From positions 186,001 through 250,000 of the forward strand of contig NW_003314356.1 of the NCBI RefSeq assembly GCF_000143415.4: a DNA stretch of 64,000 nucleotides, in the 5' to 3' direction. The notes beneath the pieces were generated by a model that saw nothing but the letters and a program-made list of their open reading frames with translations, did not search any database and was not told the DNA's origin. The position numbers and the translations under genes were made by a program. The DNA comes from Selaginella moellendorffii (taxonomy: Eukaryota; Plantae; Lycopodiophyta). Of this stretch, positions 22,401 to 58,281 are shown in pieces. Each line of letters opens with the position of its first letter. Position 1 is the first letter of the stretch.

Positions 22401-23976
22401 TCAATTCCTTATAATTTAGTTTATAAAGTTTTTTTGTAGTGCTACTTTTTTCATTGAGCAATTTTTGTGAAGCTGAGGTAGAGCTCCATTCCTGAGAATT
22501 GTGCTTAAGAAATTTCATAGAAGGGTCACCAAATGAATCACCCAAGACAAAATGTGGAAGAAAAACAGAATTGGATTTTATCACCTTTGCAAATACCTAG
22601 ATAGACACATATCCTTGCTAGAGGAAGAGATCTAACATCAGTTGCATTGCCTGACACTAGATTCAAGAGCTTCCTTAGAATAGCTTGTGGTGGCAGGGAG
22701 CATAGAAACATAAGTTTGGCCCACAAAGGTCACCATTTCAATCTTATTATCAAATGGTCCTTTCTTAAAAATTCCTTTAGGAAATAATTTTTAAAATCTA
22801 TATTATATTTTGATAATTATATTATGCTATACTTTAAAAAATATTAAATATCATTATATTCTTCTTGTATATTGTAATATATCAGATCTAAGACTATTTT
22901 TTATTTATATGTTCTTTATAATTAAAGTATCAACAATCTAATTCAGAAAATGAAGAATTGGAGGGGATAAACATCAATAACAACACCTTATTCACAAATG
23001 ATAATCTTGATACAAAAATATATTATCTTAAAATAAAATAAAAATAATATAAATTTAACTATTATGTCATATTATATTCAGAAGATGTTATTACATTATA
23101 ATAGATATAGTACCATGAAAAAATATAATAATATTATTATATAAATAGTAATGTGCTAGATCTAAGCTTTTAATAAAATTATTGATATTTTTCATAATCT
23201 AAGTTTGTTTACATAATTGCTAAATAGTAAGTAGTTTTTAGTAGTCTTATAGTAATTTTATATTTAAATTATACATTTCTAAATTTTTAACTATATATGA
23301 ATTAAAATTCCGTGGCAAAAGCTCTATTTCGTTAAAGTGGGATTTATTCAGTAAAATGGGACTAGGTACAAATTTTCAAGTATTTGAAAATGACGTGAAA
23401 TTATATGTTTTTTGTCTAGGGGCTAGACATATCTGGGGCATGGTGACTAGCGCAGTGACTTTATGTCCAGACTAAGTCCATCTGGTTGTATAATAAATCT
23501 CATTGTCAAGGTGAACAAGCCGAATCTGAAGCTAAAGAAGAGTGATGGCATGTGCGCACACACTATTTATTTGTTCATTGAGCGTGTGGTGAGCTTTCCA
23601 AGATGAACGTCATTCCTATTAGCCAGACATATAACTTAATGGTGAGAACATTTAAATATTATTCAATGTTATCTTTTTCTAACAAATCTAATTGTGAAGG
23701 TGTAGCAAGAGGCATTGCTAGTCTGGAGAAGTCATTTAACTCATTTGACCCTTGAAATTTTCATGAAACTAAATAACATTCATATTATTAAGGAATTTCT
23801 TTAGTACCTTTTTTTTACGACATAGAGGCTTGCATTTCTTTCAAAGGTGATTTAGTAAAAGGCCTAAGGGCACATGCCATTCTATTTCTCAGACCGGTAT
23901 TAAGATATACTAGTGCAAAGGGAAAAAGGTATTTAGTGATCAAGTAAATGGCATGAGGGCACACGCCATTATAAGC

Positions 23977-24234
23977 CTAAGCGCTAGTGGACACCTCCTT
24001 TTTGGTACTCTCAGCGGTACTATCATCCTTCTCCGGGTCAGTTGTTTTGCTTTGGATTGTTGTCTCTGACGTTACTGGGGCGTTCTCGATAGTTGTTAAT
24101 GTTGCCGTTTGTTCAGAAAAATGATCACCTGGAGTATAGTACGGGGAGTTTGGAAGACTTATATATTCTACATCTTCACCTATCTCCTTCTCCGTCTCCT
24201 TTTCTGCCTCACTTACAGATTTTGTGCTTGCCAT
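23977..24234 (-). CDS. Small Ser/Thr/Glu-rich ORF inside the transposon, function unknown
   Basis: MASTKSVSEAEKETEKE...VSTSA; higher-GC patch between palindromes; no recognised domain. Confidence 0.25.
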   Translation of the reverse strand: MASTKSVSEAEKETEKEIGEDVEYISLPNSPYYTPGDHFSEQTATLTTIENAPVTSETTIQSKTTDPEKDDSTAESTKKEVSTSA

Positions 24235-24874
24235 GAGAACGCTCTTCACCCTAAAATATGGAGTTCGTTGTGTTATAAAAGGAAACCAACACACACGCTG
24301 CAAGGGAATGATGGTACATAAAGCACGTAAGCCCACAATATAGGTTTATGTGCCATTAATATGGGCCACACGCCATATTATTAGATTTATGCACGTGTGA
24401 TTGGTAAATGCATATGTCACATCATCTTTGTTTTACCTCACACACTATATTAGGCCTAATGAACCATATCACATGTGCGCACATGCTATATATATGGAGA
24501 AGTATTATGCAAGGATAGAAAAATTCAATGCATGATTGTGGAGAGCAATGGCATGAAGCCACATGCTAAATAACATTTTAGAGAAAGAATTAAAATAAAA
24601 ACATGCAAATAGTACTGAGTGGACCAAGACTTAGAAGTGCACAATTGAATGAGGTATTTCTAATAAATATTTCACTCACCTCATATAGGAATGGCTACCA
24701 CTCTCAAATGGCGTATCGCCTCATGCCATCACCTCGCAATTTGTTATAACAATCCGATGAATTCATATTCGGCTTGTTCACCTTGAACTTTAAGTAAGAT
24801 TTGCTAGAACAACTAAGAATTTATACTTGTTATTTGTATCATCTCACCTAGGAATGGCGTAAGGCCACATGCCA

Positions 24875-27800
24875 TCACGCCTCCTCTGATTCAGATTCGG
24901 ATTGTTCACCTTGAAATAAAATACATTAGAAACTTAGTAAAGGAATATTAATGAATCTCACCTTGAACCCGGGTTATGAATGCTCTTGCTGCATCTCTTG
25001 CATGGTCTGGCAAGGTGATGGTGGCACTCTGCTTCTGCATCCAACCATGCACAACATTATCCACCGATATGCTCATGCTGGGATCCCTTGGATTCAGCAC
25101 CCATCTCTTTTCTAGGCAATCCTTCGTATATCCAGAACTTGGCTTGAACCACTCCACAGTTACATTGAAGGAGTTAGTTTCCGCGTCCTCCTCTGCATCA
25201 CTGATGCAGCGCCCCACCCATATCATTTGTTTTTTATTACTGGGTCTGATAAGCACGACCATTCCTTTGCAGACCTGTACTGGATTGAATGCTGAATCCG
25301 GCTTCTTGTTCCTCGGCCCACAATAGTGATCCTCAACATCGTTATCTGTCACTGCATTTCCAGAGGACATTGTTCCGCTACTATCTGGTGCTCTGGGTTC
25401 TGGCCAAAAGGACTCTTCCAATTCTTCATATACAACCGGCCCATTTTGGATAGCAGATATAATCTTCTCCCAGTATTCGAGCAAAGGCTTGCACCTCTGA
25501 AAATAGGATTCTCCACCAAACACCAACCCCCTCTTCCAGAAGGCAATATGCTGTCTAATCCCGGCCACTATACTTTCCTGATCTTTGAGTCCATCCGGGT
25601 GCATTGGCCGTGGGGAACCCTAAGGAATCATAGGTTCCCCAGTTATGGGATCTCTCTTGAAGAGTTCAATGCCGTCCACTGGCAGCCACATTGTGTCCCA
25701 TTCTCTCATCTTGTACCTCATCACTGGAGCACCGTCACGCATGCTGAAATGAAACTGAAGAGGCTTGGAGTGGCCAATCAGCGTTTCAGATCCGTCCCTG
25801 ATGTAGCCTCTTACAAACCCCTTAAAGTCTGGAACCTCTGTCACAAGTGCAGCTTCAACAGTGCCTTTGATGCAATTTTGGAATTCATCGTAGAGTTGTG
25901 GGAGGGTGAGGACATTGGATCGCCGGAGGGACTCTGCCAGGTGACTGAACATGGCATCGACGTCTTCATAAGTCTGCCCAACCATGAGAAAGCCAAGTGT
26001 AACCGTTTCAAATATGCCTTTGGCAACAAGCATCGCCAAGTACGCGAAGATGTACATGTTTTTGTTCTCACTGCCAGCATTGTCTGTTTGGAGCAGAAGA
26101 TGGGGTGGAAGGCCACATCGGCCGCAAGAACTTCCTTGAGATTCTGCTTCGTTTGGATGAGGCTGTGCATTCACCGGGCGATCAGCCTCGTCGGAATGGC
26201 ATGAGGCCTCACGTGATAACCCTACAATCTGACGGCCAACATATTCACTGGGATGGCATGGGGCCCCACGCAATACTACAAGCCTTTGCTCCTCCTCCAG
26301 CTGAACCCTGTATGGGGTTCGATCGACAAGGGCCTTATGCAAGGGTTGGCCGTTCAGCTCAGTCTGCACACTTTGCAGAGACCTTAAGTGTTTTGCTAGG
26401 GACGCAATCATCATGTTTGCACCCCCGCCACCCCATAGAGGTACAAAGAAGTTCCCATAGTTCTGGGCACCATGCCCATGAGCGATTATGCCAAACAGAG
26501 ACACAGGCAGCTGCATGGATGAAGAGATTGCCTTGGGGGCAGGATTGAGTCGAGGTAAGCACGTCTTTTTCTGGTCCATTTTGTCGTGGATGATGCAGAG
26601 GTAAGAGTCAGGTCTCTCCATGGAGAGAATCCTGTTATGATAATATGCAGTCCTGCAGCTTCTCTGCTCGATGTTGTGGTCGAGCCGCCTTCTAACCAAC
26701 GTCTCTTGCTCTTGAGCGCTGCAAGAATTCTTCGACAAAGCCATTTTGATAGCAGTGCACTCGTCACACTTTGAAAAGCTGGAGTACTTTCCTATACTCA
26801 CATTCCTGAACTTGTTGCTCCACAATCTACTAAATTTAGATTGGCTCAGCTTCCTGTAGCCATTACTCTGGAGTTCCCGATTCACATCTTCCAATATGGC
26901 CCCCTTGGTATACATGGAAGGGAGAACTCGTTGGGTGTCTCGTGTTCCATCTTCCAAGAGGCGGGTTTTATGTGGTTGCTGCTCGCTACATGTCTCGACA
27001 AACCTCTTGAAGATTGCCTCTCCATATACAACATGACCCTTGGTTTTATGCGTACCGTCATTCCCATGGACTGCCTGTTGAACCCTTTGTTCCTCGAACT
27101 CAGTTTTGATTCTGTAGAATGTGGTTCGAGGGACTCCATAAATGATTCTCCATGCTTTCATGCAGACCAAACCCCTCTGGAAGACCATGCCCCCCACCTG
27201 ATGTTCTGAAGCATCAACAGATGACCGTAATGCCTCATACACAAAATTGCGAGCTGCCTTCCAGGACAATGTCTTGTATCTTGCTCTCTCCTCTTCAATA
27301 GCATCCCAATCAGCATGTTGACAGCACCTCCTCTTGCAACAAACAACTGTCGAGACCATTCGAACCTCCATCGCCATTTTCTGCCTTTTCGGTTCGTTGC
27401 TCAGATCCCTTTGGCTGCGCTTTAGGAAGGTGTACTTTCTTTTCCCATGAAGAGATGTTCTATCATCAGTTGTAGTGGTGTTTGATTGTGAATCCTTCAC
27501 ATTCTCAAACACTAAGTGCCTCAATTTCCACCACACAATGCTTCCAATAGTCAGACTGTTTTCTTCTGTGTCAACAACCTCTAAAATCGCAACTCCAATA
27601 TCATCCCAGCCCAATTCTTGATTAGCAACCGCATCTCTTGGATCGACAACTGTGGCTAAGCCCTCAGCTACCACCTCCCCCTCGGGGTTGTTTAGAAACA
27701 CCTTTGCCTGAATCCATGTAGCACGGTTCTTAAGATCCACGGAGGGAACATGCGTCGCACTTGCGCTGTCCCCAACATCTGCTTTCTTCTGAAGATTTTT

Positions 27801-28016
27801 CAAGGCAACAACAACATTTACCCCGACGACCATCTCTCCTCGTTCAATAGCGACCACATTCCCATCGAAGACAGTCTCTACTGATACAGCAGCATTGCCT
27901 TCCCCAAGCCTTTCACAGTGTATAACAAAGTTCCGATCCATAGACACAAGGGTCCCTTTTGCAACTCTCTTCCCACCATTCAAAATGTAAACCTTTTCCC
28001 CAACCCTGAAGGCCAT
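24875..28016 (-). pseudogene. Sola1/DUF7869-like DDD transposase (~1,030 aa), one in-frame stop in copy 1
   Basis: CCKRRC, VCMKAWRIIYGV, FSKCDEC, IIHDKMDQKK, LQTDNAGSENKN, FLMVG(Q/H)T(Y/H)EDVDAMFS. TAA at 25620-25622 is CAA in copy 2, so ORFs 25620-28016 and 24948-25604 are one frame. A predicted intron at 24910-24961 gives a C-terminus GEQSESESEEA*. Confidence 0.8.
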
Positions 28017-29272
28017 TCTGAAAGTGCAAAAAAGACGTTAAAACCATACAAAAAATGATTGGAGAATGGCCTAAATCATAACATACCAAACAACCTCAAT
28101 AGCATGAGGCCATATGCCATTATTCAAACATGCTATTGACACCCACGTGAAATTTCGCATTCACAAAATTGGCATGAGGCCTCATGCCATCTTGATATAC
28201 ACACAGCTGCAGGCAAGTAAAAACATACATGACAATACGCTAGCCATGAAATTGCAAGGGCCCAAGATGGCATGTGGCCTCATGCCATTTCTAAATGTGG
28301 TCCTAAGCCATTCCATGGTGAACATACCAGGAAGCACAAGTGCCGAATATCAAGAGGAAGCGGTAGCCACACCAAAGACAGTGCCGCTCGCAACACTGCA
28401 ACTGCTCGTAGCGCCGCTCGCACAAACTGCCACTCGCATAAACTGCCGCTCGCAATGGCGCTCGCAATGCCGCAACCGCTCGTAGACGCATAAACCACAG
28501 CTCACAACGCCGCTTACACAAGCAGCGCTCACTGCGCTCAGCGGAACCAAGAACACGGCGCACAAAAATGATAGACCTAGGAATGAGTTCGAGAATTCAA
28601 AAATAACACACGCTTGAACGTCACATCAAATCCTCTGACAAACCAGATCTTATGACTCCTCTGACAAATTTCAAACTGAGTAGCTTCTAGACTTTGCTGT
28701 CGGAGGTTGAACTTTGTCACATCATGTCCTTGCCTCGATCCAGCTGTGCCATGTCAGTGATTCGAACTTTGCCATGCCATGTCAGCGATCTGCGCCAAGA
28801 TTATTCGCCGTGTAAAGGAATAATTATGCTGTGTGTGTACGTCCATTTATGGCAATATAAGGCCACACGCCATTCAAAGAATAATGCTAGTCGAGCATTT
28901 TTTGGTGCATTTTTGGGTTCAAAATTGCATGAGCCCGCACGCTATAAAGTTTACCTGTACCAAAAATAGAAACAGCTTTATTTACTTGGGAATTTAAGTG
29001 GTTGAGGCATTTTTAAACTTACAAACACATGCCCTACTTTGGTTGCTTAAAATTCAAAAATATTATAAACCTTTCTTTTTGTATTTTCAATGTTTTCAAT
29101 TATGGTTTTTGATTTTCGCAGGACCAGCCTAGTAATCTATTTGCATCCCGTCATGTTTATAGCTAGCTTTCGTTTGTCCCCTTCGCTAGCCTGAAATACA
29201 TCTGCTCGGCATCTGCCTATTACAGCATTTGCCCAGAAAGGGCATCTTTCTTCACGCAGCATTTGCCACATG

Positions 29273-29298
29273 TTTAGGGTTTAGGGTTTAGGGTTTAG
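29273..29298 (+). promoter_or_regulatory. Short interstitial plant telomeric repeat (telo-box-like) in the spacer between the divergent genes
   Basis: (TTTAGGG)3 TTTAG; mirrored at ~59855-59880. Confidence 0.6.
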
Positions 29299-30389
29299 CA
29301 ATTCAGTAGCTTGATAAACATGCAAATACAGAACTTGATGCAAAATCCTTTGATATGTCACAATGCCCCTAGGACCATAAACACATTTCAATAGAGAGGG
29401 TCCTTTCATTTCATAACTCCTTACGTAGATCTTGGTGAAACCAGAGTTAGTGAAGTTAGTTTCTTGTGATCCCGCATCTGATTGTGATGTCCCTTTGCAG
29501 TGTCAATGGAAAGGTCAATGCACACCAAACTGTAAAATCTTGGAGCAAAATAACGGTCGGATCTATGGCAAATGCCCCTGAAACATTGTAAGGCTCGTGT
29601 GGTCTCATGTAGTGTCCGATCGAGATGCTTCTTTGCAGGGTCATCAAGTAAGACATTGTATACCATTCTGTTAAATCTAGTTGCGATCTAACGGTTGGAT
29701 CTCCAGAAAACTCAAAAAAATCTCGCACGTGTCAGAATATCCTAGGAATATACTCCTATGTGCCCCTGAAAATGGCATGCGGCCCCACGCCATTCAAGAG
29801 ATAACGCCAGATGACGCCGAGAATTTTTTGGTGCATTTTTTGGGTTCAAAATTGCATGAGCCCACACGCTATAAAGTTTATCTTTGCCAAATAGAGAAAA
29901 GTTTATCTGTGTCATGTGAGGTAGTTACAATCCTTTGTGCTCGGCATCTGCCTCTTGCAGCATTTGCACTGAAAGGGAATTTTTCTCCATTCAGCATTTG
30001 GCCCTGAAAATGGCATGCGCCCACACGCCATTCAAGGAATAATGCCACAGGACGCCTGGATTTTTGGGTTTAAAATGTTTAGGGTTTTTTGGGTTTTTTA
30101 AAAATATTTTGGGTCCAACGTTTTTTGGGTTTCTTTGGTTCAAAATTGCATGAGCCCACACGCTATAATATTGATTTGAGAGAAAAATAGAAACAGATAG
30201 AATTTCTTTATTTAGCTGAACATCTGCCATTTTTGGAAATACAAGATGCTTTGGAATATCCAATCATTTCAGCGCCACTCTCCAACTGTTAAGTGGCAGA
30301 GTAGCCTTGTTGCTACGATCCGCTGCACACACAGTGCACATTCGCCAGCGAGTCCGGCCTCGATTGTCACGGCCTCCATTCGGCTTCAA

Positions 30390-33300
30390 ATGGTAAGTCT
30401 TTTAGGCCAAGTAGAAAATGGCATGAGGCCACATGCCATTCAGTAGCAACATTGGCATGCACCGATTGGGCTCTTGAGTGCAGTCCGGTTACAGATGGCG
30501 TCTAGCCTCACGCCATCTTAGGATGCAGCCTCAAGACATCTGATGTAGTGGTGAATGGCGTGTGGCCTCACGTTATTTCCAGCTGCTAGCTTTTCATCTG
30601 TCAGTTCTAATTGTTGTGCATTTTTGAACAGGCGAGGAATTGCGTTCTTCTTCCAGCCACTGTCAATGTGGATGCAGAGAAGGGGGAGGAGCTCACCAGT
30701 TGGACTTTCGGGATGGAAGGCGAGGATCTGAGGCTGTACAACACAGATGGTGGGAGAAAAGAATGCATGGGGATCCTCATCCAAGTGACAGACACTCCAT
30801 GCAGTTCCATGCAAGAATATGGACTGGCACTTGTGGTAGAGACAGCGTCCGCCTTCAAGATCCACCTTGCACATCCTAACGGCTTCCCGGAGGGGGGTAG
30901 CAGCTATGAGGAATTCCTAGAGGGAGCTAAGGAGAGGTTGTCCAGGAGGCCCACAATTTCAAAGACGCTGCAGGTCTATGAAGATCACATGGAATCCACG
31001 GACCTCACCTACGGCGATGTTCAAAAACTATATTCCAACATTGAGCCGTTGAGAGTGCCTCCAGTTCGCGAAGCGAAGGGGAAGGGGGTCGATCTGGAAA
31101 CTACCCCGAAGCAGAAAAGGGTGGTCAAGCTCAAGCCGACGTTCGACTCTCTTGCTCCAAAAAAGAAGCTACTCGGTGATGCCATTGCCTCGGGTTCGAA
31201 CACTACACCCACCAAAAAGAAGAGCTGCAAAGAGCAGAAAAAGCAAGAAGAGGCAGCAAAAATCGTCACAGATAATAGTACTTGTTACTATTCCAACAAA
31301 GTATATACAATCGACGTGAGCCGTATCGACATCCAAAGCAAATACAGCCACAGGCTAGTACCTGATGAGTGGGTGGAGAAAATGAAGCAGAAGATGCTAG
31401 CAAGTCTAGTAACACCCGACATCGCAGACGTGATCCCCTACTACCGAACAATGAAGGGCGAGACGAGGTTTCCAGACTTGATCAATAGGAAGGTGTTGGA
31501 CGATCAGAACATCCGGTTCTATGCCGTCTCCAGGCAGCATTCTAGCTTGGCGATGCAAGAGATAGTTGTGGATATTATGGTGGGCGAGGAGGTGAAGAAA
31601 GTCTTCAAAACAAGAGTTGTCCGCCTGATAAAAGGCAACTCGCCCCTCCGATCTATCATATCCATCTCCCACGCACAGAATGTCAAGCAAGAAACATGCT
31701 ACAAATTGGGTCTGCACGAGACATTGGCATGAACACGGAAGCTCTGGGTTCAACTGAAGAAGCCACAAAAACCAGGACAAGGACTTGCACTAGCAACTAG
31801 CGCCTGGCAGGTAAGCCTCGTTGCATGTGGCATAGCATGTGGCCTCACACCATTTCCATTGCAGGAATTCTCGAGTCTTCTCTCGAAAACACTGGGGGTC
31901 AATGACACACTCAGCATCCATAACATTCTACTCACAACAAAAGTTGTTTTTGACAAATGGGTAGATGTGCGGAGGAGGTACCATGACGGGGAGTTGCTAA
32001 ACTCAATGGGTGTGGAGGACGGCCGGAAGCCCAATGATTTGAAGCTCAACGCCTTGCGTTTCTTGCGGTCTCAAGATGACGGCGACCTTCAGACAGTGGC
32101 TAATGCTCTTCTACGTGGTGAGGTAGTCTTCAACAAGACCAAAATGACTCCCGCCATATTGTGACATACGAGGACTTGTGCACGACTCTGAGAGCTCGTG
32201 TGCTATTGAAGGATTGGATCTTCGAGCAAGTGGCCGTGGAGAGGGTGAGCATCGACACCACGCAAGAGATGATGGAAGAGTTGGAGTTGTCAAATGAAGA
32301 CATCGACGACTACGTGAAGGGGGCCCCCAAGTTCATCGATCTGCTGCGGGATGCCACGAAAAGTAAAGCTGAGAAGTTGGATCAGTATCCAAATTTCATT
32401 AAGAGGGATGTCGACCGCCGGCTTCAGAAACAGCTCGACCCCGCAACAGAGGCCTATCGAGAACCTTACCGGGTATACGTGAATTCGGATGAGGATCAAA
32501 GGTGGAGGAGCATCGTTTCCCGCGGAGATGAGCAGGTCAAAAACATCTTTTGTGTGATGGACTTCACAAACGAGGAGATCACTCATGCAGACGAAGTCAG
32601 CTCCATCATTGACTTAATGGTGGGACTTGCGGAGGTGGAATCTTCAGTCCACTATATGATCTACGACTCCGAATCCTATCACAAGTTCTGGAAGGCCTTG
32701 AACGAGGTGAAGGCTCGGTTGAAAGGCAAGGAGATGCGGGAGATCCATGGGATAATGGCTAAGAAGAAGATACCGACGAATGTCCGCATCTTCACACTCG
32801 CCCTTGTTATTGGTCCTGCAGCAGAGTGGGACTGGAGTGACTTCCCAGCTTCGTTCGACAAGGCCGATCGAATTGATCTGAGGGAGGTCAATTTACCCGT
32901 GCCTGAGGAACTGAAGACGGCTATGGAGCTTTCGAATCCAGAGAAAGCTCCAGGTGCAGCATGGGAAATGCTCAGCTGGGTCTTCAACGCAATAGCACCT
33001 GCTTCCGACTCCAAGGGCAAATGCGTTGTCGAGTATAACTGCGGCGGACTATTCTTTCGAGCCGCACTACTCAAGGGTGTCCCGTGTGTTGCGGTGACAA
33101 ACTCCATTGAAGAGGTGACTTCAATGAAGCATATAATTACAGTTGCCAAAGAAAAACAGTATCTTCTCTGCGAACCTGGTGAGTACGCACTTTAAGTTTA
33201 AATGTTATCTCACAAGCTCTGTATGCAGGAGCGTGGCCACCCCCAGATGCTGAAACGGCGTTAACAGCTACTGTTGAAGATACCCATGTTAGGCCGAGCT

Positions 33301-35950
33301 CACAACCTGCACAAGGTAAGGTCACGTGAGGCCTCACACCATTTTGATTATAGATCGTTGTGAATATTCAGACACGAGGACTGAAAAGCGCACTGGTGGC
33401 GCGTCGAAGAAGGACAAACAGACAAGCAATAGGAAAAAAGGAGGTACAAATTATATTTGCAATGGCGTGTGGTCTCATGCCATTCCTTGCAGGAGACACT
33501 TCTTCAAAGGCAAAACAGGCAAGCACCAGCCAAGCTCAAACTGACAGTGGTCATAAAAAGTGAAAGCACGTTGGACAGTTGTCGGGATCAGAGGCGTTTA
33601 ATTCGAAAAGGAAGAAGGGCAACGAAAAGATGATAGGTAATGCCTCGTGGTCACCACCTCCTGACTCAGATTCCTATGGCAGACTCCCCTTCCCCAATCT
33701 CAATGGAAAGGTACAATGGATGAGGGATGCTTTTCAAGTCAGGGCCACGTTTTTCTCATCTCGTCGTCTTCGAAGGGTGCAAGAACGTGCAGAAACCATG
33801 TTAAGATAGTCGGGTGAGGATACGGTCCTAGGTCACGCACTAAAACAGGCTATGGATGTCTTGTATTTTGAGATGGAGACTCGGCCAGATGATTTTCCCA
33901 AGATGGTCCTAGAAGAACAAGCCATCCAGCCTGAGCAGCCTATGGAAGAAATGCAGGAGGGGGATGAGGAGCCAGAGAAAAATAATGAGCAGGAAGAGCA
34001 GAAGGACGAAGAGGAGGACAAAGAAGAGGAGGACGAAGAAGAGGAGGACGAAGAGGACTTGGATGGTCCTCACAATGGTGACAATCACAATAACGACGAC
34101 GACGATGATGACGACAATGGCCAGGCTGAGGTGGCCAAAGAGCAGCGGAGGAAGGTCATACAAGACAAACCATCAGGTAAATAATAGTACATCCATTCCT
34201 AACCTTTTACCATTTCTAACATTGTCCATGTAGGTTGCAAAGCAAATGGTAAGTAGAGATTATTCAGTTGAATTAAGATACAAATTCTAGCCTTTAGTGT
34301 CGAGGAAGGATAGTGCCAAGCAAGGGTTGAAACGTATGTCCAATCCTTCAGAATCAGCAGTGCGCCCAAGTGATATCGGTCCTAGTTCCTCAATAGCAGT
34401 TGATGGTAAATACAGTATAGTCGATTCAATGTGCTAATAAGTTTGTTTTTAGTAGCCAGTAGGGAGGATACCATCTGAATCGAAAGGAGATATTTGGACA
34501 TGCATATGGATCCGCCAATGGACTCTACTTGCCTGCAAGAGTCATCAGAGCTGGTGGAGGCTACTATCCATATCAACGCCAAGCAAGCTGACCACGCTCC
34601 ACTTGATGCTGCCCATACCACTGAGTCAATCTTGTCCACGTATCCAACTGACGGTGACCAGGCGCCATTGGACCCGCATGAGGCCGCCCCAGCCGCCGAG
34701 CCGGTCGTATCCTCATTTCCAACGGACTCAACGTGTGCCCAATTGTCTGACTACGTGCCGTTGGAACCTCCCTACACCGCCCTTGCTGCCTGTTCAGTCA
34801 TGTCCACTTTGCCAACAGAGGCATCAGCTGAAATGGCGTGTGATCACACGCCATCGGAACCACCCCATGCCACTGTTGAGCCAGTTGTACCAGAGTCTAC
34901 AGCTGAAATGGCATGTGCCCACATGCCATCGGATGCGATTGACCCCACATTGCAGAGGAGAGTATTTCCGCCCTTCACGTTTCCTCGACCAAAACCCTCT
35001 CAACGACCATCGGGAGCACCATTCGCTAATATTGTAGATGGTAAAATTGACTTGTACCATTTTTTATGCTGACGCATTTCATTTCAGAGTCACAGCGAAG
35101 GTACTGTATCATTTTTTATCTGAACGGTGTCCTTTTCTCCCATGAGCATGGCTCGTCCTCGAATGTCACTGCACCCTCCAAAGCTTGCAGTCGCAAGTTG
35201 GTCAAAAGAGACAGATTCACATTAATCACACGGGAGAAACTGCGGGATCTAATAATGACCATGCGACACTTAAAACAGAGGGCCGGGTTCAATTTGCAAT
35301 TGGGAGTTTGGACATCCATAATGCGCCACAATGCATTAACGTTGCTACAGATGATGCACGATCAGACGCGAGTAATATTACCATTTGACTTTCTCCTAAC
35401 GCAGGAGGATTGCTTGACTATGGTCCATGTGAGGGGTAGCAAGCCCATCTTCGTCAAGCCAGAGGCTGTAGTGATGAACCGGACTGCTAGGTCAAGTGAA
35501 ATCCTCATCATCGATGACTCGCCGATTAAAACTGCAGCGAACACGCACACATATGCAGTGCACCCCATCTCTTGCAGTATGGAAACTAGGGAGAAGAAAC
35601 CGTATGTTCTGGGGGACCTTGCAAAACGGCTTGGAGCGATGGTGATAGAGAACCGGCCAGTCCAGGAGGTGGCTGCAGAAATTAACCAAATGGCAGATGG
35701 AACGGTATATCAGAAGCCATTTGATCGGACAGACACCAGTCATCATTTATGGCATGTATATTGTCTAGCCAAGCACTATCCGCATCTCCATAATCTGCTC
35801 AACCGGATGGGTTCTTCGACCACTGAACATGAGCATGGACGTATTAGAGAAGAGATGGCATTACTATTGGGTTTAAATCCTGATAGTGTGGAGAGTGATG
35901 AAATTCCAAGATTATTGTATAGGCGTTGGAGGCAAAAAATAACAGTCTAA
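30390..35950 (+). pseudogene. 10-exon transposon accessory gene: ParB-like domain + degenerate N4/N6-MTase-like fold + acidic linker + FCP1/NIF HAD phosphatase-like domain (copy 1, disabled)
   Basis: Predicted GT-AG introns 30393-30631, 31811-31864, 33179-33228, 33316-33371, 33444-33492, 34177-34233, 34249-34297, 34406-34452, 35041-35087 all keep frame (~1,640 aa). Copy-1 lesions (stops near 31730, 33561, 33807, 34476; 1-bp deletion near 32153) are absent in copy 2. Confidence 0.8.
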
Positions 35951-36392
35951 GATGGCATGTATTTATTTAAAAATGTAACTTATTATGGCATGGGGTTCCA
36001 TGCCATTGTATTAATATTAAAATACAATTCTTTGAGAGGATTTGCATTATACTAGAAGTGTTACAGCATGTTATTGGAAGTCTACGAAGTTGTTTTATTA
36101 ATAAGGGGAAAGTAAAGATTGAATGGGGACTTGGGCTCCACCTAGACTCGGAGCAACTGAGCCAATATTAAAAGGATGGAAAGAAATTGGACGACGATGA
36201 CAAGGAGAAGAGAGAGGTGAAGCAGTGGCAGGGGGAGGAGAAGTGATTGAGTAGACATTTCCTTGTTTAAAATAAAATGGCATGTGCCTCAATGCAGTTG
36301 AATTTTGTTATATTTATATACTATATAAAGGTTTGGAAACCTTATTTTACAAGTGGGATAATGACAATTCCCACTTTAACGAAATAAAGCTT

Positions 36393-37672
36393 ATTCACAC
36401 CTTTTTAAGGTCACAACTCAAGGAATGCTCCAGAATATTTACAAATTTTTTATGACAACCAAGATCCCAAATCACTACTTCACAAACGATCAAAAGAAAA
36501 AATTCGTCTTGAGGACATGACGATATTCAGTTGTGGGAGGCAAACTATATAAGCTTGGACATGACAACATCTTGAGAAGATGCATAGAATCACAAGAAGA
36601 GATTAAGGATCTACTCGATGAAGCTTATGCAGGAAGATCAGGAGGTCATTTTGTCAAAGAAATTACAGCCAGGAAAGTGTTACAAGCTGGATTATGGTGG
36701 CCGACACTTTGGAAAGACACCACTTAGCATTGTCAAGAATGTGACATATGTCAAAGAATGAAGTTTCCACTAAGGAAACAAACTCAGGAACTCAATCCAA
36801 CAATGGCATTGGAACCCTTCCAGCATTGGGGACTTGATTTTGTTGGACCTATAGCAAAAAGTAGTAAAGGAAATCAATATATTTTGGTCGCTACTGATTA
36901 TATGACAAAATGGGCAGAAGCTCTCCCACTAAAGAAAGCCACAGCAAAAAATACAGCCAAGTTTCTCTATGAAACAATTATAACACGATATGGATTACCA
37001 CAAGAAATTGTTACAGATCGAGGAACACATTTTCTGAATGAGACCATCGACATTCTTGTTAAAGAATTTATCATCAACCATAAGAAGTCGACACCATATT
37101 ACCCCCAGGGTAATGGACAAATAGAATCAACAAACAAAACGCTTAAAAACATAATCAAGAAAATAGTCAAGACAAACCTTAAGGATTGGGATGAAAGAAT
37201 TTACAATGCTCTTTGGGCTTACAGAACAACCTACAAAGTTTCAACAAATTCTACACCTTTCAAGTTTGCTTATGGCCTTGAAGTGTTAACACCACTAGAG
37301 TATACAGTACCATCCTTGAGAATGGCCATTGAACTTGAAATTAATCAAGAAGAATCGATCAAGAAAAGACTCACGATGCTTGAAAAACTCGATGAAGAAA
37401 GACTAAGTGTAATATGGACAATCGAAGCAATACAGGCTAGAAGGAAAGCTTATCAAGATCGCAAACAAGTCAAGAAAAACAAAGTGCATTACAAAGTAGG
37501 AGATTTTGTATTATGGTATTGTGGCAATGTGGATAAACTTGGAGGAAAACTCGTTCATCAATGGGAAGGACCATTCAAGATTACAAGTATACAAATCCCA
37601 GGAACAGCAAAACTTGCAACTTTAGATGATGAAAAATTGCAAGTAGTTAAAAAAATTAACGTTTATTTTTAA
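36393..37672 (+). pseudogene. Ty3/Gypsy integrase fragment (non-chromovirus, Tat/Athila-like)
   Basis: GGHF..TARKVLQAGLWWPTL, PFQHWGLDFVGP, VATDYMTKWAEA, VTDRGTHF, PQGNGQIESTNK, WEGPFKI; starts abruptly at the transposon TIR. Confidence 0.9.
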
Positions 37673-46141: not shown

Positions 46142-46241
46142 NNNNNNNNNNNNNNNNNNNNNNNNNNNNNNNNNNNNNNNNNNNNNNNNNNNNNNNNNNN
46201 NNNNNNNNNNNNNNNNNNNNNNNNNNNNNNNNNNNNNNNNN
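46142..46241. other. Assembly gap (100 N), preceded by low-quality sequence
   Basis: N run; 45720-46141 is a homopolymer-smeared version of 46242-46650. Confidence 0.97.
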
Positions 46242-52261: not shown

Positions 52262-52703
52262 AAGCTCTATTTCGTTAAAGTAAGAATTGTCATTATCCCA
52301 CTTGTAAAATAAGGTTTCCAAACCTTTATATAGTATATAAATATAACAAAATTCAACTGCATTGAGGCACATGCCATTTTATTTTAAACAAGGAAATGTC
52401 TACTCAATCACTTCTCCTCCCCCTGCCACTGCTTCACCTCTCTCTTCTCCTTGTCATCGTCGTCCAATTTCTTTCCATCCTTTTAATATTGGCTTAGTTG
52501 CTCCGAGTCTAGGTGGAGCCCAAGTCCCCATTCAATCTTTACTTTCCCCTTATTAATAAAACAACTTCGTAGACTTCCAATAACATGCTGTAACACTTCT
52601 AGTATAATGCAAATCCTCTCAAAGAATTGTATTTTAATATTAATACAATGGCATGGAACCCCATGCCATAATAAGTTACATTTTTAAATAAATACATGCC
52701 ATC

Positions 52704-55700
52704 TCAGACTGTTATTTTTTGCCTCCAACGCCTATACAATAATCTTGGAATTTCATCACTCTCCACACTATCAGGATTTAAACCCAATAGTAATGCCATC
52801 TCTTCTCTAATACGTCCACGCTCATGTTTAGTGGTCGAAGAACCCATCCGGTTGAGCAGATTATGGAGATGCGGATAGTGCTTGGCTAGACAATATACAT
52901 GCCATAAATGATGACTGATGTCTGTCCGATCAAATGGCTTCTGATATACCGTTCCATCTGCCATTTGGTTGATTTCTGCAGCCACCTCCTGGACTGGCCG
53001 GTTCTCTATCACCATCGCTCCAAGCCGTTTTGCAAGGTCCCCCAGAACATACGGTTTCTTCTCCCTAGTTTCCATACTGCAAGAGATGGGGTGCACTGCA
53101 TATGTGTGCGTGTTCGCTGCAGTTTTAATCGGCGAGTCATCGATGATGAGGATTTCACTTGACCTAGCAGTCCGGTTCATCACTACAGCCTCTGGCTTGA
53201 CGAAGATGGGCTTGCTACCCCTCACATGGACCATAGTCAAGCAATCCTCCTGCGTTAGGAGAAAGTCAAATGGTAATATTACTCGCGTCTGATCGTGCAT
53301 CATCTGTAGCAACGTTAATGCATTGTGGCGCATCATGGATGTCCAAACTCCCAATTGCAAATTGAACCCGGCCCTCTGTTTTAAGTGTCGCATGGTCATT
53401 ATTAGATCCCGCAGTTTCTCCCGTGTGATTAATGTGAATCTGTCTCTTTTGACCAACTTGCGACCGCAGGCTTTGGAGGGTGCAGTGACATTCGAGGACG
53501 AGCCACGCTCATGGGAGAAAAGGACACCGTTCAGATCAAAAACGATACAGTACCTTCGCTGTGACTCTAAAATGAAATGCGTCAGCATAAAAAATGGTAC
53601 AAGTCAATTTTACCATCTACAATATTAGCGAATGGTGCTCCCGATGGTCGTTGAGAGGGTTTTGGTCGAGGAAACGTGAAGGGCAGAAATACTCTCCTCT
53701 GCAATGTGGGGTCAATCGCATCCGATGGCGTGTGGGCACATGCCATTTCAGTTGTAGACTCTGGTACAACTGGCTCAACAGTGGCATGGGGTGGTTCCGA
53801 TGGCGTGTGATCACACGCCATTTCAGCTGATGCCTCTGTTGGCAAAGTGGACATGACTGAACAGGCAGCAAGGGCGGTGTAGGGAGGTTCCAACGGCACG
53901 TAGTCAGACAATTGGGCACACGTTGAGTCCGTTGGAAATGAGGATACGACCGGCTCGGCGGCTGGGGCGGCCTCATGCGGGTCCAATGGCGCCTGGTCAC
54001 CGTCAGTTGGATACGTGGACAAGATTGACTCAGTGGTATGGGGAGCATCAAGTGGAGCATGGTCAGCTTGCTTGGCATTGATATGGATAGTAGCCTCCAC
54101 CAGCTCTGATGACTCTTGCAGGCAAGTAGAGTCCACTGGCGGATCCATATGCATGTCCAAATATCTCCCTTCGATTGAGATGGTATCCTCCCTACTGGCT
54201 ACTAAAAACAAACTCATTAGCACATTGAATCGACTATACTGTATTTACCATCAACTGCTATTGAGGAACTAGGACCGATATCACTTGGGCGCACTGCTGA
54301 TTCTGAAGGATTGGACATACGTTTCGACCCTTGCTTGGCACTATCCTTCCTCGACACTAAAGGCTAGAGTTTGTATCTTAATTCAACTGAATAATCTCTA
54401 CTTACCATTTGCTTTGCGACCTACATGGACAATGTTAAAAATGGTAAAAGGTTAGGAATGGATGTACTATTATTTACCTGATGGTTTGTCTTGTATGACC
54501 TTCCTCCGCTGCTCTTTGGCCACCTCAGGCTGGCCATCGTCGTCATCATCGTCGTCGTCGTTATTGTGATTGTCACCATTGTGAGGACCATCCAAGTCCT
54601 CTTCGTCCTCCTCTTCTTCGTCCTCCTCTTCTTTGTCCTCCTCTTCGTCCTTCTGCTCTTCCTGCTCATTATCTTTTTCTGGCTCCTCATCCCCCTCTTG
54701 CATTTCTTCCATAGGCTGCTCAGGCTGGATGGCTTGTTCTTCCAGGACCATCTTGGGAAAATCATCTGGCCGAGTCTCCATCTCAAAATACAAGACATCC
54801 ATAGCCTATTTTAGTGCGTGACCTAGGACCGTATCCTCACCCGACTGTCTTAACATGGTTTCTGCACGTTCTTGCACCCTTCGAAGACGACGAGATGAGA
54901 AAAATGTGGCCCTGACTTGAAAAGCATCCCTCATCCATTGTACCTCTCCATTGAGATTGGGGAAGGGGAGTCCGCCATAGGAATCTGAGTCAGGAGGTGG
55001 TGACCGCGAGGCATTACCTATCATCTTTTCGTTGCCCTTCTTCCTTTTCGAATCAAACGCCTCTGATCCCAACGACTGTCCAACGTGCTTTCGCTTTTTA
55101 TGACCACTGTCAGTTTGAGCTTGGCTGGTGCTTGCCTGTTTTGCCTTTGAAGAAGTGTCTCCTACAAGGAATGGCATGAGACCACACGCCATTGCAAATA
55201 TAATTTGTACCTCCTTTTTTCCTATTGCTTGTCTGTTTGTCCTTCTTCGACGCGCCACCAGTGCGCTTTTCAGTCCTCATGTCTGAATATTCACATCGAT
55301 CTATAATCAAAATGGCGTGAGGCCTCACGTGACCTTACCTTGTGCAGGTTGTGAGCTCGGCCCAACATGGGTATCTTCAACAGTAGCTGTTAACGCCGTT
55401 TCAGCATCTGGGGGTGGCCACGCTCCTGCATACAGAGCTTGTGAGATAACATTTAAACTTAAAGTGCGTACTCACCAGGTTCGCAGAGAAGATACTGTTT
55501 TTCTTTGGCAACTGTAATTATATGCTTCATTGAAGTTACCTCTTCAATGGAGTTTGTCACCGCAACACACGGGACACCCTTGAATAGTGCGGCTCGAAAG
55601 AATAGTCCGCCGCAGTTGTACTTGACAACGCATTTGCCCTTGGAGTCGGAAGCAGGTGCTATTGCGTTGAAGACCCAGCTGAGCATTTCCCATGCTGCAC

Positions 55701-58281
55701 CTAGAGCTTTCTCTGGATTCGAAAGCTCCATAGCCGTCTTCAGTTCCTCAGGCACGGGTAAATTGACCTCCCTCAGATCAATTCGATCGGCCTTGTCGAA
55801 CGAAGCTGGGAAGTCACTCCAGTCCCACTCTGCTGCAGGACCAATAACAAGGGCGAGTGTGAAGATGCGGACATTCGTCGGTATCTTCTTCTTAGCCATT
55901 ATCCCATGGATCTCCCGCATCTCCTTGCCTTTCAACCGAGCCTTCACCTCGTTCAAGGCCTTCCAGAACTTGTGATAGGATTTGGAGTCGTAGATCATAT
56001 AGTGGACTGAAGATTCCACCTCCGCAAGTCCCACCCTTAAGTCAATGATGGAGCTGACTTCATCTGCATGAGTGATCTCCTCGTTTGTGAAGTCCATCAC
56101 ACAAAAGATGTTTTTGACCTGCTCATCTCCGCGGGAAACGATGCTCCTCCACCTTTGATCCTCATCCGAATTCATGTATACCCGGTAAGGTTCTCGATAG
56201 GCCTTTGCTGCGGGGTCGAGCTGTTTCTGAAGCCAGCGGTCGACATCCCTCTTAATGAAATTTGGATACTGATCCAACTTCTCAGCTTTACTTTTCGTGG
56301 CATCCCGCAGCAGATCGATGAACTTGGGGGCCCCCTTCACGTAGTCGTCGATGTCTTCATTTGACAACTCCAGCTCTTCCATGTCTTCATTTGACAACTC
56401 CAGCTCTTGCGTGGTGTCGATGCTCACCCTCTCCATGGCCACTTGCTCGAAGATCCAATCCTTCAATAGCGCACGAGCTCTCAGAGTCATGCACAAGTCC
56501 TCGTATGTGACAATATGGCCGGGAGTCATTTTGGTCTTGTTGAAGACTACCTCACCACGTAGAAGAGCATTAGCCACTGTCAGAAGGTCGTCGTCGTCTA
56601 GAGACCGCGAGAAACGCAAGACGTTGAGCTTCAAATCATTGGGCTTTCGGCCGTCCTCCACACCCATTGAGTTTAGCAACTCCCCGTCATGGTAACTCCT
56701 CAGCACATCTACCCATTTGTCAAAAACAACTTTTGTCGCGAGTAGAATGTTATGGATGCTGAGTGTGTCATTGACCCCCAGTGTTTTCGAGAGAAGACTC
56801 GAGAATTCCTGCAATGGAAATGGCGTGAGGCCACATGCTATGCCACATGCAACGAGGCTTACCTGCCAGGCGCTAGTTGCTAGTGCACGTCCTTGTCCTA
56901 GTTTTTGTGGCTTCTTCAGTTGAACCCAGAGCTTCCGTGTTCGTGCCAATGTCTCGTGCAGACTCGATTTGTAGCATGTTTCTTGCTTGACATTCTGCGC
57001 GTGGGAAATGGATATGATAGATCGGAGGGGCGAGTTGCCTTTTATCAGGCGGACAACTCTTGTCTTGAAGACTTTCTTCACCTCCTTGCCCACCATAATA
57101 TCCACAACTATCTCTTGCATCGCCAAGCTAGAATGCTGCCCGGAGACGGCATAGAACCAAATGTTCTGATCGTCCAACACCTTCCTATTAATCAAGTCTG
57201 GAAACCTCGTCTCGCCCTTCATTGTTCGGTAGTAGGGGATCACGTCTGCGATGTCGGGTGTTACTAGACTTGGTAGCATCTTCTGCTTCATTTTCTCCAC
57301 CCACTCATCAGGTACTAGCCTGTGGCTGTATTTGCTTTGGATGTCGATACGGCTCACGTCGATTGTATATACTTTGTTGGAATAGTAACAAGTACTATTA
57401 TCTGCGACGATTTTTGCTGCCTCTTCTTGCTCTTTCTGCTCTTTGCGGCTCTTCTTTTTGGTGGGTGTAGTGTTCGAACCCGAGGCAATGGCATCACCGA
57501 GTAGCTTCTTTTTTGGAGCAAGAGAGTCGGACGTCGGCTTGAGCTTGACCACCCTTTTCTACTCGGGGTAGTTTCCAGATCGACCCCTTTCCCCTTCGCT
57601 TCGCGAACTGGAGGCACTCTCAACGGCTCAATGTTGGAATATAGTTTTTGAACATCGCCGTAGGTGAGGTCCGTGGATTCCATGTGATCTTCATAGACCC
57701 GCAGCGTCTTTGAAATTGTGGGCCTCTTGGACAACCTCTCCCTAGCTCTCTCTAGGAATTCCTCATAGCCGCTGCCCCCTCCAGGAAGCCGCTAGGATGT
57801 GCAAGGTGGATCTTGAAGGCGGACGCTATCTCTACCACAAGTGCCAGTCCATATTCTTGCATGGAACTGCATGGAGTGTCTGTCACTTGGATGAGGATCC
57901 CCATGCATTCTTTTCTCCCACCATCTGTGTTGTACAGCCTCAGATCCTCGCCTTCCATCCCGAAAGTCCAACTGGTGAGCTCCTCCCCCTTCTCTGCATC
58001 CACATTGACAGTGGCTGGAAGAAGAACACAATTCCTTGCCTGTTCAGAAATGCACAACAATTAGAGCTGACAGATGAAAAGCTAGCAGCTGGAAATAACG
58101 TGAGGCCACACGCCATTCACCACTGCATCAGATGTCTTGAGGCTGCATCCTAAGATGGCGTGAGGCTACACGCCATCTGTAACCGGACTGCACTCGAGAG
58201 CCCAATCGGTGCATGCCAATGTTGCTACTGAATGGCATGTGGCCTCATGCCATTTTCTACTTGGCCTAAAAGACTTACCAT
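52704..58281 (-). pseudogene. ParB-like/MTase-like/FCP1-like accessory gene, copy 2
   Basis: Same exon structure; keeps FYAVSGQHS and IVFDLNGVL. Lesions: 1-bp deletions near 57775 and 57563, TAG at 54806. Confidence 0.8.

What the first reader, a model, noticed from the sequence alone, without database searches (positions are those of the whole stretch)
23319..36392. Candidate new system: 13-kb Sola-like transposon pairing a ParB/MTase-fold/phosphatase protein with ~29 dispersed palindromic sites
Seen: TIRs, a DDD transposase, a divergent 10-exon gene, and a 22-bp dyad repeated along the whole element but not noticed elsewhere in the window. Established: bacterial ParB proteins load at palindromic parS sites and spread along DNA; Arabidopsis VANDAL transposons encode VANC proteins that bind short motifs accumulated in their own non-coding regions and remove silencing. 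Inference: the accessory protein, or the transposase, binds the palindromes to mark its own copies, as a self-recognition, anti-silencing or synapsis module. I do not know of this combination being described, but cannot search.
Basis: partly seen in the sequence, partly recalled or inferred. Interest (0 to 1): 0.93.

Follow-up and report, generated by a model that had tools for sequence, protein, structure and literature searches.

The report
Sola-like transposon with private palindromes
A 13-kb cut-and-paste transposon, present twice in the window, carries about 27 copies of its own 22-bp palindrome in its non-coding DNA; distant relatives carry different palindromes next to the same transposase gene, so these look like recognition sites for the element's own protein, not a new ParB-based system.

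Summary
The sequence observations are largely real. The element is 23319-36392, with 27-nt inverted ends. It has a 1022-codon transposase frame, a divergent block of long open frames, and 25-27 copies of ATGGCRTGNGGCCNCAYGCCAT. At up to 3 mismatches no site lies outside the two copies, and sites avoid open coding blocks (2 of 27, p=7e-7).

The transposase is Pfam DUF7869. Its catalytic motifs match published Sola1 motifs.

The ParB, methyltransferase and phosphatase labels found no support in four profile libraries, PDB, tblastn or an exhaustive protein search. Structure models were unusable. Only the last block has a real homologue, with HAD-like motifs by eye.

The main new result is comparative. 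Several distant relatives (28-35% identical transposases) carry their own, different palindromes, mostly in arrays 0.4-1.9 kb upstream of the transposase gene. None shows any similarity to the accessory gene.

The palindromes therefore go with the transposase. They are most likely binding sites for an element-encoded protein, as with En/Spm TnpA sites or VANDAL VANC targets. No binding was shown. I rate this a new variant of a known kind.

The parts
23319..23345 (+). Left terminal inverted repeat (AAGCTCTATTTCGTTAAAGTGGGATTT)
   Evidence: pair I4, 27 nt, 93%. The boundary is confirmed by the deleted copy L083, which ends at the same base.
36366..36392 (+). Right terminal inverted repeat
   Evidence: pair I4. 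Similarity to copy 2 stops exactly at 36392 = 52262.
24948..28016 (-). Transposase gene. One 1022-codon frame with no intron needed. Pfam DUF7869 with Sola1-like catalytic motifs. Broken in this copy by a TAG at codon 799 (25620-25622).
   Evidence: Codon positions: D478 = 26583-26585, D645 = 26082-26084, E684/D685/D687 = 25956-25967. Copy 1 reads GQTYED where copy 2 and P0015 read GHTHED.
23545..24875 (.). Left subterminal cluster downstream of the transposase gene: 7 palindromic sites (starts 23545, 23859, 23948, 24468, 24548, 24708, 24854)
26196..26274 (.). Two palindromic sites inside the transposase frame (starts 26196, 26253). They lie in the length-variable linker between the first and second catalytic Asp.
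   Evidence: (unalignable linker)
28099..30576 (.). Intergenic region between the two divergent genes: 11 palindromic sites (starts 28099, 28169, 28267, 28924, 29772, 29851, 30010, 30145, 30418, 30495, 30555). One triplet lies within about 270 bp of the transposase ATG. Another lies within about 300 bp of the first in-frame ATG of the accessory frames.
   Evidence: Local duplications D4, D5 and D7. Telomere-type repeat at 29272-29298.
30713..31729 (+). Accessory block A, an open frame from the first in-frame ATG. No homologue or family was found.
   Evidence: (pLDDT 32)
31832..31853 (.). Palindromic site between accessory blocks A and B
31865..32161 (+). Accessory block B (open frame; the start coordinate is an inferred splice acceptor)
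32122..33192 (+). Accessory block C (357 open codons). It has no true homologue among 1.84 billion representative proteins.
   Evidence: the only hit is a spurious TSP1-repeat protein; pLDDT 35
33321..33483 (.). Two palindromic sites (starts 33321, 33462) in the gap between blocks C and D
33564..34181 (+). Accessory blocks D and E (two open frames separated by one stop; the second is acidic and low-complexity)
34479..35069 (+). Accessory block F, Pro/Ala-rich, either coding or intronic. It contains two palindromic sites (starts 34833, 34908) inside a 75-bp duplication.
   Evidence: (D12)
35051..35947 (+). Accessory block G, the last block. It is the only part with a real homologue (P0041). Its motifs look HAD/FCP-like by eye: FDLNGVLFS in copy 2, FYLNGVLFS in copy 1, then VWTS and IIDDSP.
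35985..36298 (.). Right subterminal palindromic sites (starts 35985, 36277)
52262..64000 (-). Second copy of the element, inverted and cut by the window end, 97.8% identical to 25152-36392. It has 20 palindromic sites.
58405..58883 (-). A 479-bp CpG-rich segment of the intergenic region present only in copy 2. Copy 1 lacks it at 30266/30267.

Best explanation
The region is a copy of a 13-kb (about 13.5 kb when undeleted) cut-and-paste DNA transposon of the DUF7869 / Sola1-like kind. It inserted recently and both copies in the window are now broken.

The 22-bp palindromes are most likely binding sites for a dimer of an element-encoded protein. The most economical candidate is the transposase itself, through its poorly conserved N-terminal part (Cys clusters and a helix-turn-helix-like stretch).

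Proposed working (inferred):
1. The protein recognises only copies of its own lineage through these sites.
2. Sites close to the start of both divergent genes let it control their transcription or their chromatin state.
3. Sites in the subterminal and internal non-coding DNA concentrate the protein on the element for end pairing.
4. Sites turn over quickly by tandem duplication and decay, so each lineage ends up with a private motif.

What is shown: the motif, its statistics, its restriction to the element, its avoidance of coding blocks, the family-wide occurrence of lineage-specific dyad arrays, and the absence of the accessory gene in relatives.

What is inferred: that a protein binds, which protein it is, and what binding does.

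The second gene is a lineage-specific addition of unknown function. It has a possible HAD-like C-terminal domain.
For: - Motif enrichment: 44 matches in the window against 0.05 expected, all inside the two element copies. No half-site occurs outside them.
- Sites avoid open coding blocks: 2 of 27 against 53% expected, p=7e-7. Triplets of sites sit just upstream of both genes.
- Sites in the window are dispersed, not a tandem array. Only the dyad core is shared between sites (family D1), so the core itself is what is kept.
- Relatives with 28-35% identical transposases have their own dyads:
  - L001/L002: GTTATCGTCG-N3-CGACGATAAC, 16 and 8 sites.
  - L003: TTGGCCATATGGCCAA (longest form ATTTGGCCATATGGCCAAAT), 6 sites upstream.
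  - L004: GGCTCAAACTTGGGTTTGAGCC.
  - L005/L011/L012/L018: AGGAAATCTAGCACGTGCTAGATTTCCT.
  - L019: CACGGGTGAACACCCGTG, 10 sites.
  - L036, L063/64, L070, L071: AAAATGC/GCATTTT-type dyads.
- The zone 300-2000 bp upstream of the inferred transposase start holds 12 of 31 dyad families in 13.5% of the non-gene DNA, p=4e-4.
- The array lies inside the shared part of the element. Its unit number differs between two copies from one assembly, 16 against 8. Elements whose transposases are about 80% identical already differ in their dyads.
- No accessory-gene similarity appears in any of the 82 loci then held. L018, L001 and L070 have no second large open frame.
- The window motif is absent from all 84 fetched loci.
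- Precedent: VANC targets lie in non-coding regions, form tandem repeats and vary between related elements (PMC5735166, PMC10398659).
Against: - No binding was measured, and no DNA-binding domain was identified with significance. HTH_29 and TNP1/En/Spm reach only E = 0.014-0.08 in 1-2 of 8 members.
- In relatives the sites form arrays upstream of the gene. In the window they are spread over 13 kb, so the two arrangements may not do the same job.
- Some dyad families in related loci are far from the gene or belong to unrelated repeats. L062 is a 900-bp dispersed repeat. L048 and L076 lie 6-11 kb away.
- Several metagenomic loci are redundant (L012 = L018, L063 = L064), so the statistic is only approximate.
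- The terminal repeats themselves do not contain the palindrome. End recognition must therefore use another contact.
Confidence: 0.55

Rival explanations
1. The accessory protein (claimed ParB, MTase-fold and phosphatase) is the palindrome binder. It loads on the sites and spreads or modifies chromatin to protect or mark its own copies, like a VANC-type anti-silencing factor built from a ParB-like module.
For: - This lineage has both the extra gene and an unusually wide dispersal of sites, including the gaps between the accessory blocks.
- Three sites lie within about 300 bp upstream of the accessory frames.
- In VANDAL elements the binder is an accessory protein, not the transposase (PMC5735166).
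- The block-A stretch RFYAVSRQHSSLA has the strand-then-helix look of a ParB box II. This is my reading by eye only.
Against: - Relatives carry lineage-specific palindromes without any accessory-gene similarity.
- There is no ParB, MTase or NIF/HAD hit in Pfam, NCBIfam, PHROGs or PADLOC.
- PDB sequence searches were negative, as was tblastn against plasmids and phages.
- The ParB arginine motif GxxRxxA is not present.
- The structure models were unusable.
Confidence: 0.15
2. The palindromes are cis-regulatory sites for a host transcription factor or chromatin protein (promoter, enhancer or insulator elements) that the element has accumulated.
For: - Site triplets sit next to both gene starts.
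- A telomere-box-like (TTTAGGG)n repeat lies in the same intergenic region, so host-type promoter motifs are present there.
Against: - Each lineage has a completely different palindrome.
- There is not one half-site in about 39 kb of non-element DNA in the window. A host factor would be expected to have sites in host promoters as well.
Confidence: 0.12
3. There is no protein partner. The dyads are by-products of tandem-repeat formation, or act as DNA or RNA hairpins (cruciforms, recombination or replication pause sites, small-RNA sources).
For: - In relatives the sites lie in 46-64-bp tandem units.
- Local duplications exist in the window's intergenic region (D4, D5, D7).
Against: - In the window the sites are not tandem. 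Only the 22-28-bp core is shared while the flanks differ (D1).
- The sites avoid coding blocks.
- Different lineages converge independently on dyad symmetry, which points to selection on a symmetric reader.
- A 9-11-bp stem is too short for known small-RNA precursors (established knowledge).
- No Rfam family matches the window.
Confidence: 0.1

Closest known systems
Sola superfamily, Sola1 group (Bao et al. 2009, as summarised in PMC10741241; core alignment in Majorek et al. 2014, PMC3985635 supplementary file 5)
   Same: - It is a TIR element with an RNase H-like DDD/E transposase.
- The motifs IHDKMDQ / LDNCGSENKNRY / VGHTHED parallel Sola1-1_AP FDLEKVL / SDNCGGQNRNRF / ERGHTQS.
- Its size falls within the reported 2 to over 15 kb range.
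- Sola is reported in a moss. Many relatives found here come from metagenome series that I recall, from memory only, as moss or peat associated. The element carries a plant-type telomere repeat.
   Different: - The 4-bp target-site duplication is not evident, unless the terminal AGCT is itself a palindromic duplication.
- I found no description of internal palindrome arrays or of a second multi-exon gene in Sola elements in the searchable literature. Repbase itself could not be consulted.
En/Spm (CACTA) TnpA and its 12-bp subterminal motifs
   Same: - Many copies of a short motif lie inside the element, in both orientations and as dyads.
- Motifs overlap the promoter region, and in En/Spm an element-encoded protein reads them to affect both transposition and transcription or methylation (established knowledge).
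- Copy 2 has a CpG-rich segment next to the sites, which recalls the GC-rich downstream control region of Spm.
   Different: - The transposase family is different.
- Here the motif is a 22-bp perfect dyad, spread over 13 kb rather than confined to a few hundred bp at the ends.
- In the single-gene relatives no separate TnpA-like product is evident.
- The weak Pfam TNP1/En/Spm match (E=0.014-0.08) is not significant.
VANDAL21 VANC anti-silencing system (PMC5735166, PMC10398659)
   Same: Binding motifs accumulate in the element's own non-coding regions, form tandem repeats and vary strongly between related elements. The same holds here.
   Different: - VANDAL is a Mutator-like element and its binder is a dedicated accessory protein. 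Here relatives have only the transposase.
- VANC motifs are short and not palindromic.
- No Pfam family matched any accessory block, but a specific comparison with VANC was not made.
- Loss of methylation could not be tested.
Bacterial ParB-parS
   Same: A palindromic site could be read by a dimer.
   Different: No ParB homology was detected by any profile or sequence search. The element has 27 sites and sits in a eukaryote. Relatives without the candidate protein still have palindromes.

Membership tests
Sola superfamily (Sola1 group) | RNase H-like DDD/E transposase with the Sola1 catalytic blocks | tested here: met
   Three conserved blocks in alignment A1 match, by eye, the Sola1 rows printed in Majorek 2014 supplementary file 5. 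Especially close are DNCG(G/S)(Q/E)N(R/K)NR and GHT. No statistical alignment to Repbase Sola1 was possible.
Sola superfamily (Sola1 group) | 4-bp target-site duplication | tested here: inconclusive
   The flanks of copy 1 (GGCAA / ATTCA) show no duplication. All four ends end in AAGCTT, so a palindromic AGCT duplication hidden in the apparent TIR cannot be excluded.
Sola superfamily (Sola1 group) | Terminal inverted repeats | tested here: met
   27 nt, 93% complementary.
ParB/Srx (accessory block A) | Match to the ParB N-terminal domain profile with the GxxRxxA arginine patch | tested here: not met
   No hit in Pfam (E up to 10), NCBIfam, PHROGs, PADLOC, PDB sequences or plasmid tblastn. The sequence reads SRQHSSLA at the candidate position.
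ParB/Srx (accessory block A) | ParB/Srx fold | tested here: inconclusive
   The single-sequence AlphaFold2 model has mean pLDDT 32. No homologues exist to build an alignment.
SAM-dependent methyltransferase (accessory block C) | Profile or fold match to a Rossmann-type MTase with motif I | tested here: inconclusive
   No profile or PDB hit. The exhaustive search found only a spurious repeat protein. The model has pLDDT 35. Only a motif-I-like string, VVEYNCGG, is visible by eye.
HAD / FCP1-like phosphatase (accessory block G) | Motif I DxDx(T/V), motif II S/T, motif IV DD, and a family profile match | tested here: inconclusive
   Copy 2 and the homologue P0041 read FD(L/M)NGVLFS, with Asn in place of the second Asp. 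Copy 1 reads FYLNGVLFS. VWTS and DDSP are present. There is no Pfam or PDB hit for the block, for P0041 or for their profile.
VANC-type sequence-specific anti-silencing | Motifs concentrated in the element's own non-coding DNA, varying between related elements, often as tandem repeats | tested here: met
VANC-type sequence-specific anti-silencing | A VANC-family protein that binds the motifs and removes DNA methylation | not testable with these tools
   No Pfam family matched any accessory block, but homology to VANC specifically was not tested. Binding and methylation need experiments. CpG to TpG/CpA variation within the sites (36 CpG arms against 54 decayed arms) is compatible with methylated CpG but proves nothing.
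En/Spm-type subterminal transposase-binding repeats | Repeated motif near both ends, bound by an element-encoded protein | not testable with these tools
   There are 7 sites within 1.6 kb of the left end and 2 within 410 bp of the right end. Binding was not tested.

The most novel reading that the evidence does not exclude
The 13-kb lineage has turned the family's transposase-linked palindrome array into a two-component, VANC-like self-marking system. In this reading the orphan accessory protein, with degenerate ParB-like, Rossmann-like and HAD-like modules that no profile can yet see, loads on the 27 dispersed dyads. It then alters methylation or chromatin over the whole element, including its own introns.
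Probability: 0.1. Interest if true: 0.85.

Novelty: new variant of a known kind. Interest (0 to 1): 0.55.

Why it matters
I am not aware of any biochemistry on Sola-type transposons, and the literature searches here turned up none. Nothing was found on how their transposases recognise DNA.

A family-wide pattern of private, fast-changing palindromes next to the transposase gene gives a concrete and cheap hypothesis to test, because site and protein pairs from several lineages are available.

If binding is confirmed, it would extend the principle seen in VANDAL and En/Spm elements to another superfamily and probably to non-seed plants. That principle is sequence-specific self-recognition that evolves by tandem-repeat turnover.

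Orthogonal dyad and protein pairs could also serve as tools.

The second gene is an orphan. No true homologue was found for its largest block among 1.84 billion representative proteins, so its role is open.

Tried and rejected
- Profile searches of all accessory blocks against Pfam, NCBIfam, PHROGs and PADLOC found nothing.
- PDB sequence searches with single blocks and with profiles A1 and A2 found nothing meaningful.
- The word-index homologue search with block A found nothing.
- The exhaustive HMMER search with block C returned only a thrombospondin-repeat artefact.
- tblastn of blocks A and C against plasmids and phages found nothing.
- Single-sequence AlphaFold2 models of blocks A and C had pLDDT 32 and 35. 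I did not run a fold search on them.
- Exact look-ups of P0015 and of block G from both copies in public assemblies were not on record.
- A terminal motif AAARTGGGA as a possible half-site relative is not enriched.
- TIR searches in related contigs gave no clear ends. The L062 'long TIR' turned out to be a dispersed 900-bp repeat.
- Splice-site inference for the accessory gene was ambiguous.
- Comparing copy 1 with copy 2 for selection is uninformative. Amino-acid divergence of 3-6% against 2.2% at the DNA level looks neutral.
- The Bao 2009 and Yuan & Wessler 2011 papers are not held.
- No paper mentions DUF7869.
- Rfam gave no hit.

Full report
**What is there**

The interval 23319-36392 is bounded by 27-nt inverted repeats that are 93% complementary. 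It is 97.8% identical to 25152-36392, is cut by the window end, and carries an extra 479-bp CpG-rich segment (58405-58883) that copy 1 lacks at 30266/30267.

Similarity between the copies stops exactly at 36392 = 52262. A third, internally deleted copy from a public read assembly (L083) ends at the base equivalent to 23319. All four available ends read ...CGAAATAGAGCTT and then diverge.

No target-site duplication is visible around copy 1. One exception remains possible: the terminal AGCT could itself be a palindromic 4-bp duplication.

**The transposase**

On the minus strand, 28016 to 24948 is a single 1022-codon frame. It is interrupted in copy 1 by one TAG at codon 799, where copy 2 has CAG. 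Copy 2 has a nonsense codon at 297.

The protein matches Pfam DUF7869 (E=2e-39). It has unnamed relatives of about 1000-1100 residues at 28-36% identity. The alignment shows invariant IIHDKMDQKKT, LQxDN...NKN and MVG-T-ED-DA blocks; most members read GHTHEDIDA.

These blocks parallel the Sola1 rows printed in the supplement of Majorek et al. 2014 (FDLEKVL, SDNCGGQNRNRF, ERGHTQS). Sola elements are described as DDD transposons with 4-bp duplications, 2 to over 15 kb long, and are present in a moss (PMC10741241). 'Sola-like' is therefore reasonable, at motif level only.

No solved structure is related by sequence.

**The palindrome**

ATGGCRTGNGGCCNCAYGCCAT, with A/T-rich flanks, occurs 44 times in the window at up to 3 mismatches, against 0.05 expected. 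Of these, 25 are in copy 1 and 19 in copy 2, with none elsewhere. At up to 4 mismatches the counts are 27, 20 and 1. The 8-nt half-site never occurs outside the copies.

- The sites are dispersed, not tandem, and share only the dyad core (D1).
- They avoid open coding blocks: 2 of 27 against 53% expected, p=7e-7.
- Seven lie between the left end and the end of the transposase gene.
- Eleven lie in the 2.7-kb region between the two divergent genes. These include a triplet 83-251 bp upstream of the transposase ATG and a triplet within about 300 bp upstream of the first ATG of the accessory frames.
- The rest lie in gaps between accessory blocks and near the right end.
- The R/Y positions are CpG against TpG/CpA (36 against 54 arms). 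This fits decay of methylated CpG.

**The accessory gene**

On the plus strand between 30.7 and 35.95 kb there are seven long open blocks in three frames, of up to 373, 357 and 299 codons. Frames this long are not expected by chance, so this is, or recently was, coding. The exon count cannot be fixed without RNA data.

- No Pfam, NCBIfam, PHROGs or PADLOC family matched, even at permissive thresholds.
- No PDB sequence matched.
- tblastn against plasmids and phages found nothing.
- Block A had no homologue in the word-index search.
- Block C's only hit among 1.84 billion representative proteins was a spurious thrombospondin-repeat protein.
- The AlphaFold2 models, made without an alignment, were unusable at pLDDT 32 and 35.

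Only the last block has a true homologue. P0041 is a 215-residue protein on a gene-dense contig (BLASTP 2e-11). It shares FDxNGVLFS, WT(S/T)MMRHNA, LLTQEDCL and DDSP. That motif order looks HAD/FCP-like to me, but no profile confirms it. Copy 1 has Tyr where copy 2 and P0041 have the would-be nucleophile Asp.

**The comparative result**

I fetched 80 loci encoding relatives of the transposase from metagenome contigs, and two more by exact look-up.

None of these 82 loci shows any similarity to any accessory block (tblastn, E up to 0.1). None of the 84 loci held by the end contains the window's palindrome. Many nevertheless have their own repeated dyad:
- L001 and L002: GTTATCGTCG-N3-CGACGATAAC, 16 and 8 sites with about 57-bp spacing.
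- L003: TTGGCCATATGGCCAA, 6 sites upstream.
- L004: GGCTCAAACTTGGGTTTGAGCC, 3 sites.
- L005, L011, L012 and L018: AGGAAATCTAGCACGTGCTAGATTTCCT.
- L019: CACGGGTGAACACCCGTG, 10 sites, with 47-bp spacing in the main run. Eight are upstream and two downstream of the gene.
- L036, L063/64, L070 and L071: dyads of the AAAATGC...GCATTTT kind.

The arrays sit mostly 0.4-1.9 kb upstream of the inferred start of the transposase frame. That zone holds 12 of 31 detected dyad families in 13.5% of the non-gene DNA (p=4e-4). This is conservative in one respect, because L001 and L019 were scored as 'elsewhere'. It is approximate in another, because some loci are redundant.

In L001 against L002 the array lies between segments shared by the two copies, and its unit number differs. 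Elements whose transposases are about 80% identical (L006 and L008 against L012) already have altered or different dyads. L018, L001 and L070 have no second large open frame. One apparent case, L062, was a dispersed 900-bp repeat and was dropped.

**Interpretation**

The component shared by every element with a private palindrome is the transposase, not the accessory gene. The most economical reading is that the dyads are binding sites for a dimer of an element-encoded protein, probably the variable N-terminal part of the transposase.

That part carries invariant Cys clusters (CCxxxCCQ, CxxC) and a helix-turn-helix-like stretch. Pfam support for these is only marginal.

The sites' position next to the gene starts suggests control of transcription or chromatin. 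Their presence in subterminal and internal non-coding DNA suggests that they concentrate the protein on its own copies. Their turnover by tandem duplication gives each lineage a private code.

This is how En/Spm TnpA sites (established knowledge) and VANDAL VANC targets (PMC5735166, PMC10398659) behave. None of the binding steps is shown here.

The window lineage is unusual in two respects. Its sites are spread over the whole 13 kb, and it has acquired an orphan multi-block gene.

**Verdict**

- The ParB, MTase and phosphatase labels and the 'new system' claim are not supported.
- The family-wide, lineage-specific palindrome arrays of Sola1-like elements appear not to have been described in the literature I could search.
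- I rate this a new variant of a known kind, of moderate interest.

Noticed in passing
window 29272-29298: A plant-type telomere repeat, (TTTAGGG) x 3.9, lies inside the element's intergenic region. It hints that the host belongs to the green lineage, and it may act as a telo-box-like promoter motif.
   Followed up: no
window 58405-58883 (copy 2) versus 30266/30267 (copy 1): A 479-bp CpG-rich segment with CGCGCTC-type repeats is present only in copy 2, between the palindrome clusters and the accessory frames. It could be a promoter or first-exon region that copy 1 has lost.
   Followed up: partly
L083 (Logan ERR10900155), whole locus: This is an internally deleted copy of the same element. It joins window-equivalent 25884 to 23452 and lacks 27765-28008, and it has a different flank. 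The family therefore also exists as deletion derivatives at other sites.
   Followed up: partly
window 36758-37672 (+): A 304-codon open frame 366 bp beyond the right end of the element looks like a retrotransposon integrase core. I judged this by eye and did not search it.
   Followed up: no
window 3268-3924 (-): An open frame has a BED/hAT-like zinc-finger look and a plant hAT-like continuation. I judged this by eye and did not search it.
   Followed up: no
window 1110-2066 and 8732-9577 (-), also 167-871: Near-duplicate open frames rich in Ser/Asp/Arg dipeptide-like repeats lie in GC-rich, strongly GC-skewed DNA. This indicates a duplicated repetitive segment at the start of the window.
   Followed up: no
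window about 46140-46250: A run of N (translated as X) shows that the window comes from a draft assembly with a gap.
   Followed up: no
L084 2146-2793 (P0041): The only homologue of accessory block G is a stand-alone 215-residue protein. It sits in a gene-dense, apparently intron-poor contig among housekeeping genes (MOZ_SAS, ThiF, RFC-like AAA, PCI). This suggests that block G derives from a cellular gene family without a Pfam model.
   Followed up: partly
window 28016-27500 and 25400-24948 (-), i.e. transposase residues about 1-190 and the C-terminal 150: The transposase family has two N-terminal modules and one C-terminal module of about 60-90 residues that look like small beta-barrels. The N-terminal one gives a marginal Pfam TNP1/En/Spm match (E=0.014-0.08 in 2 of 8 members). 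They could be chromatin-reader or DNA-binding modules.
   Followed up: partly
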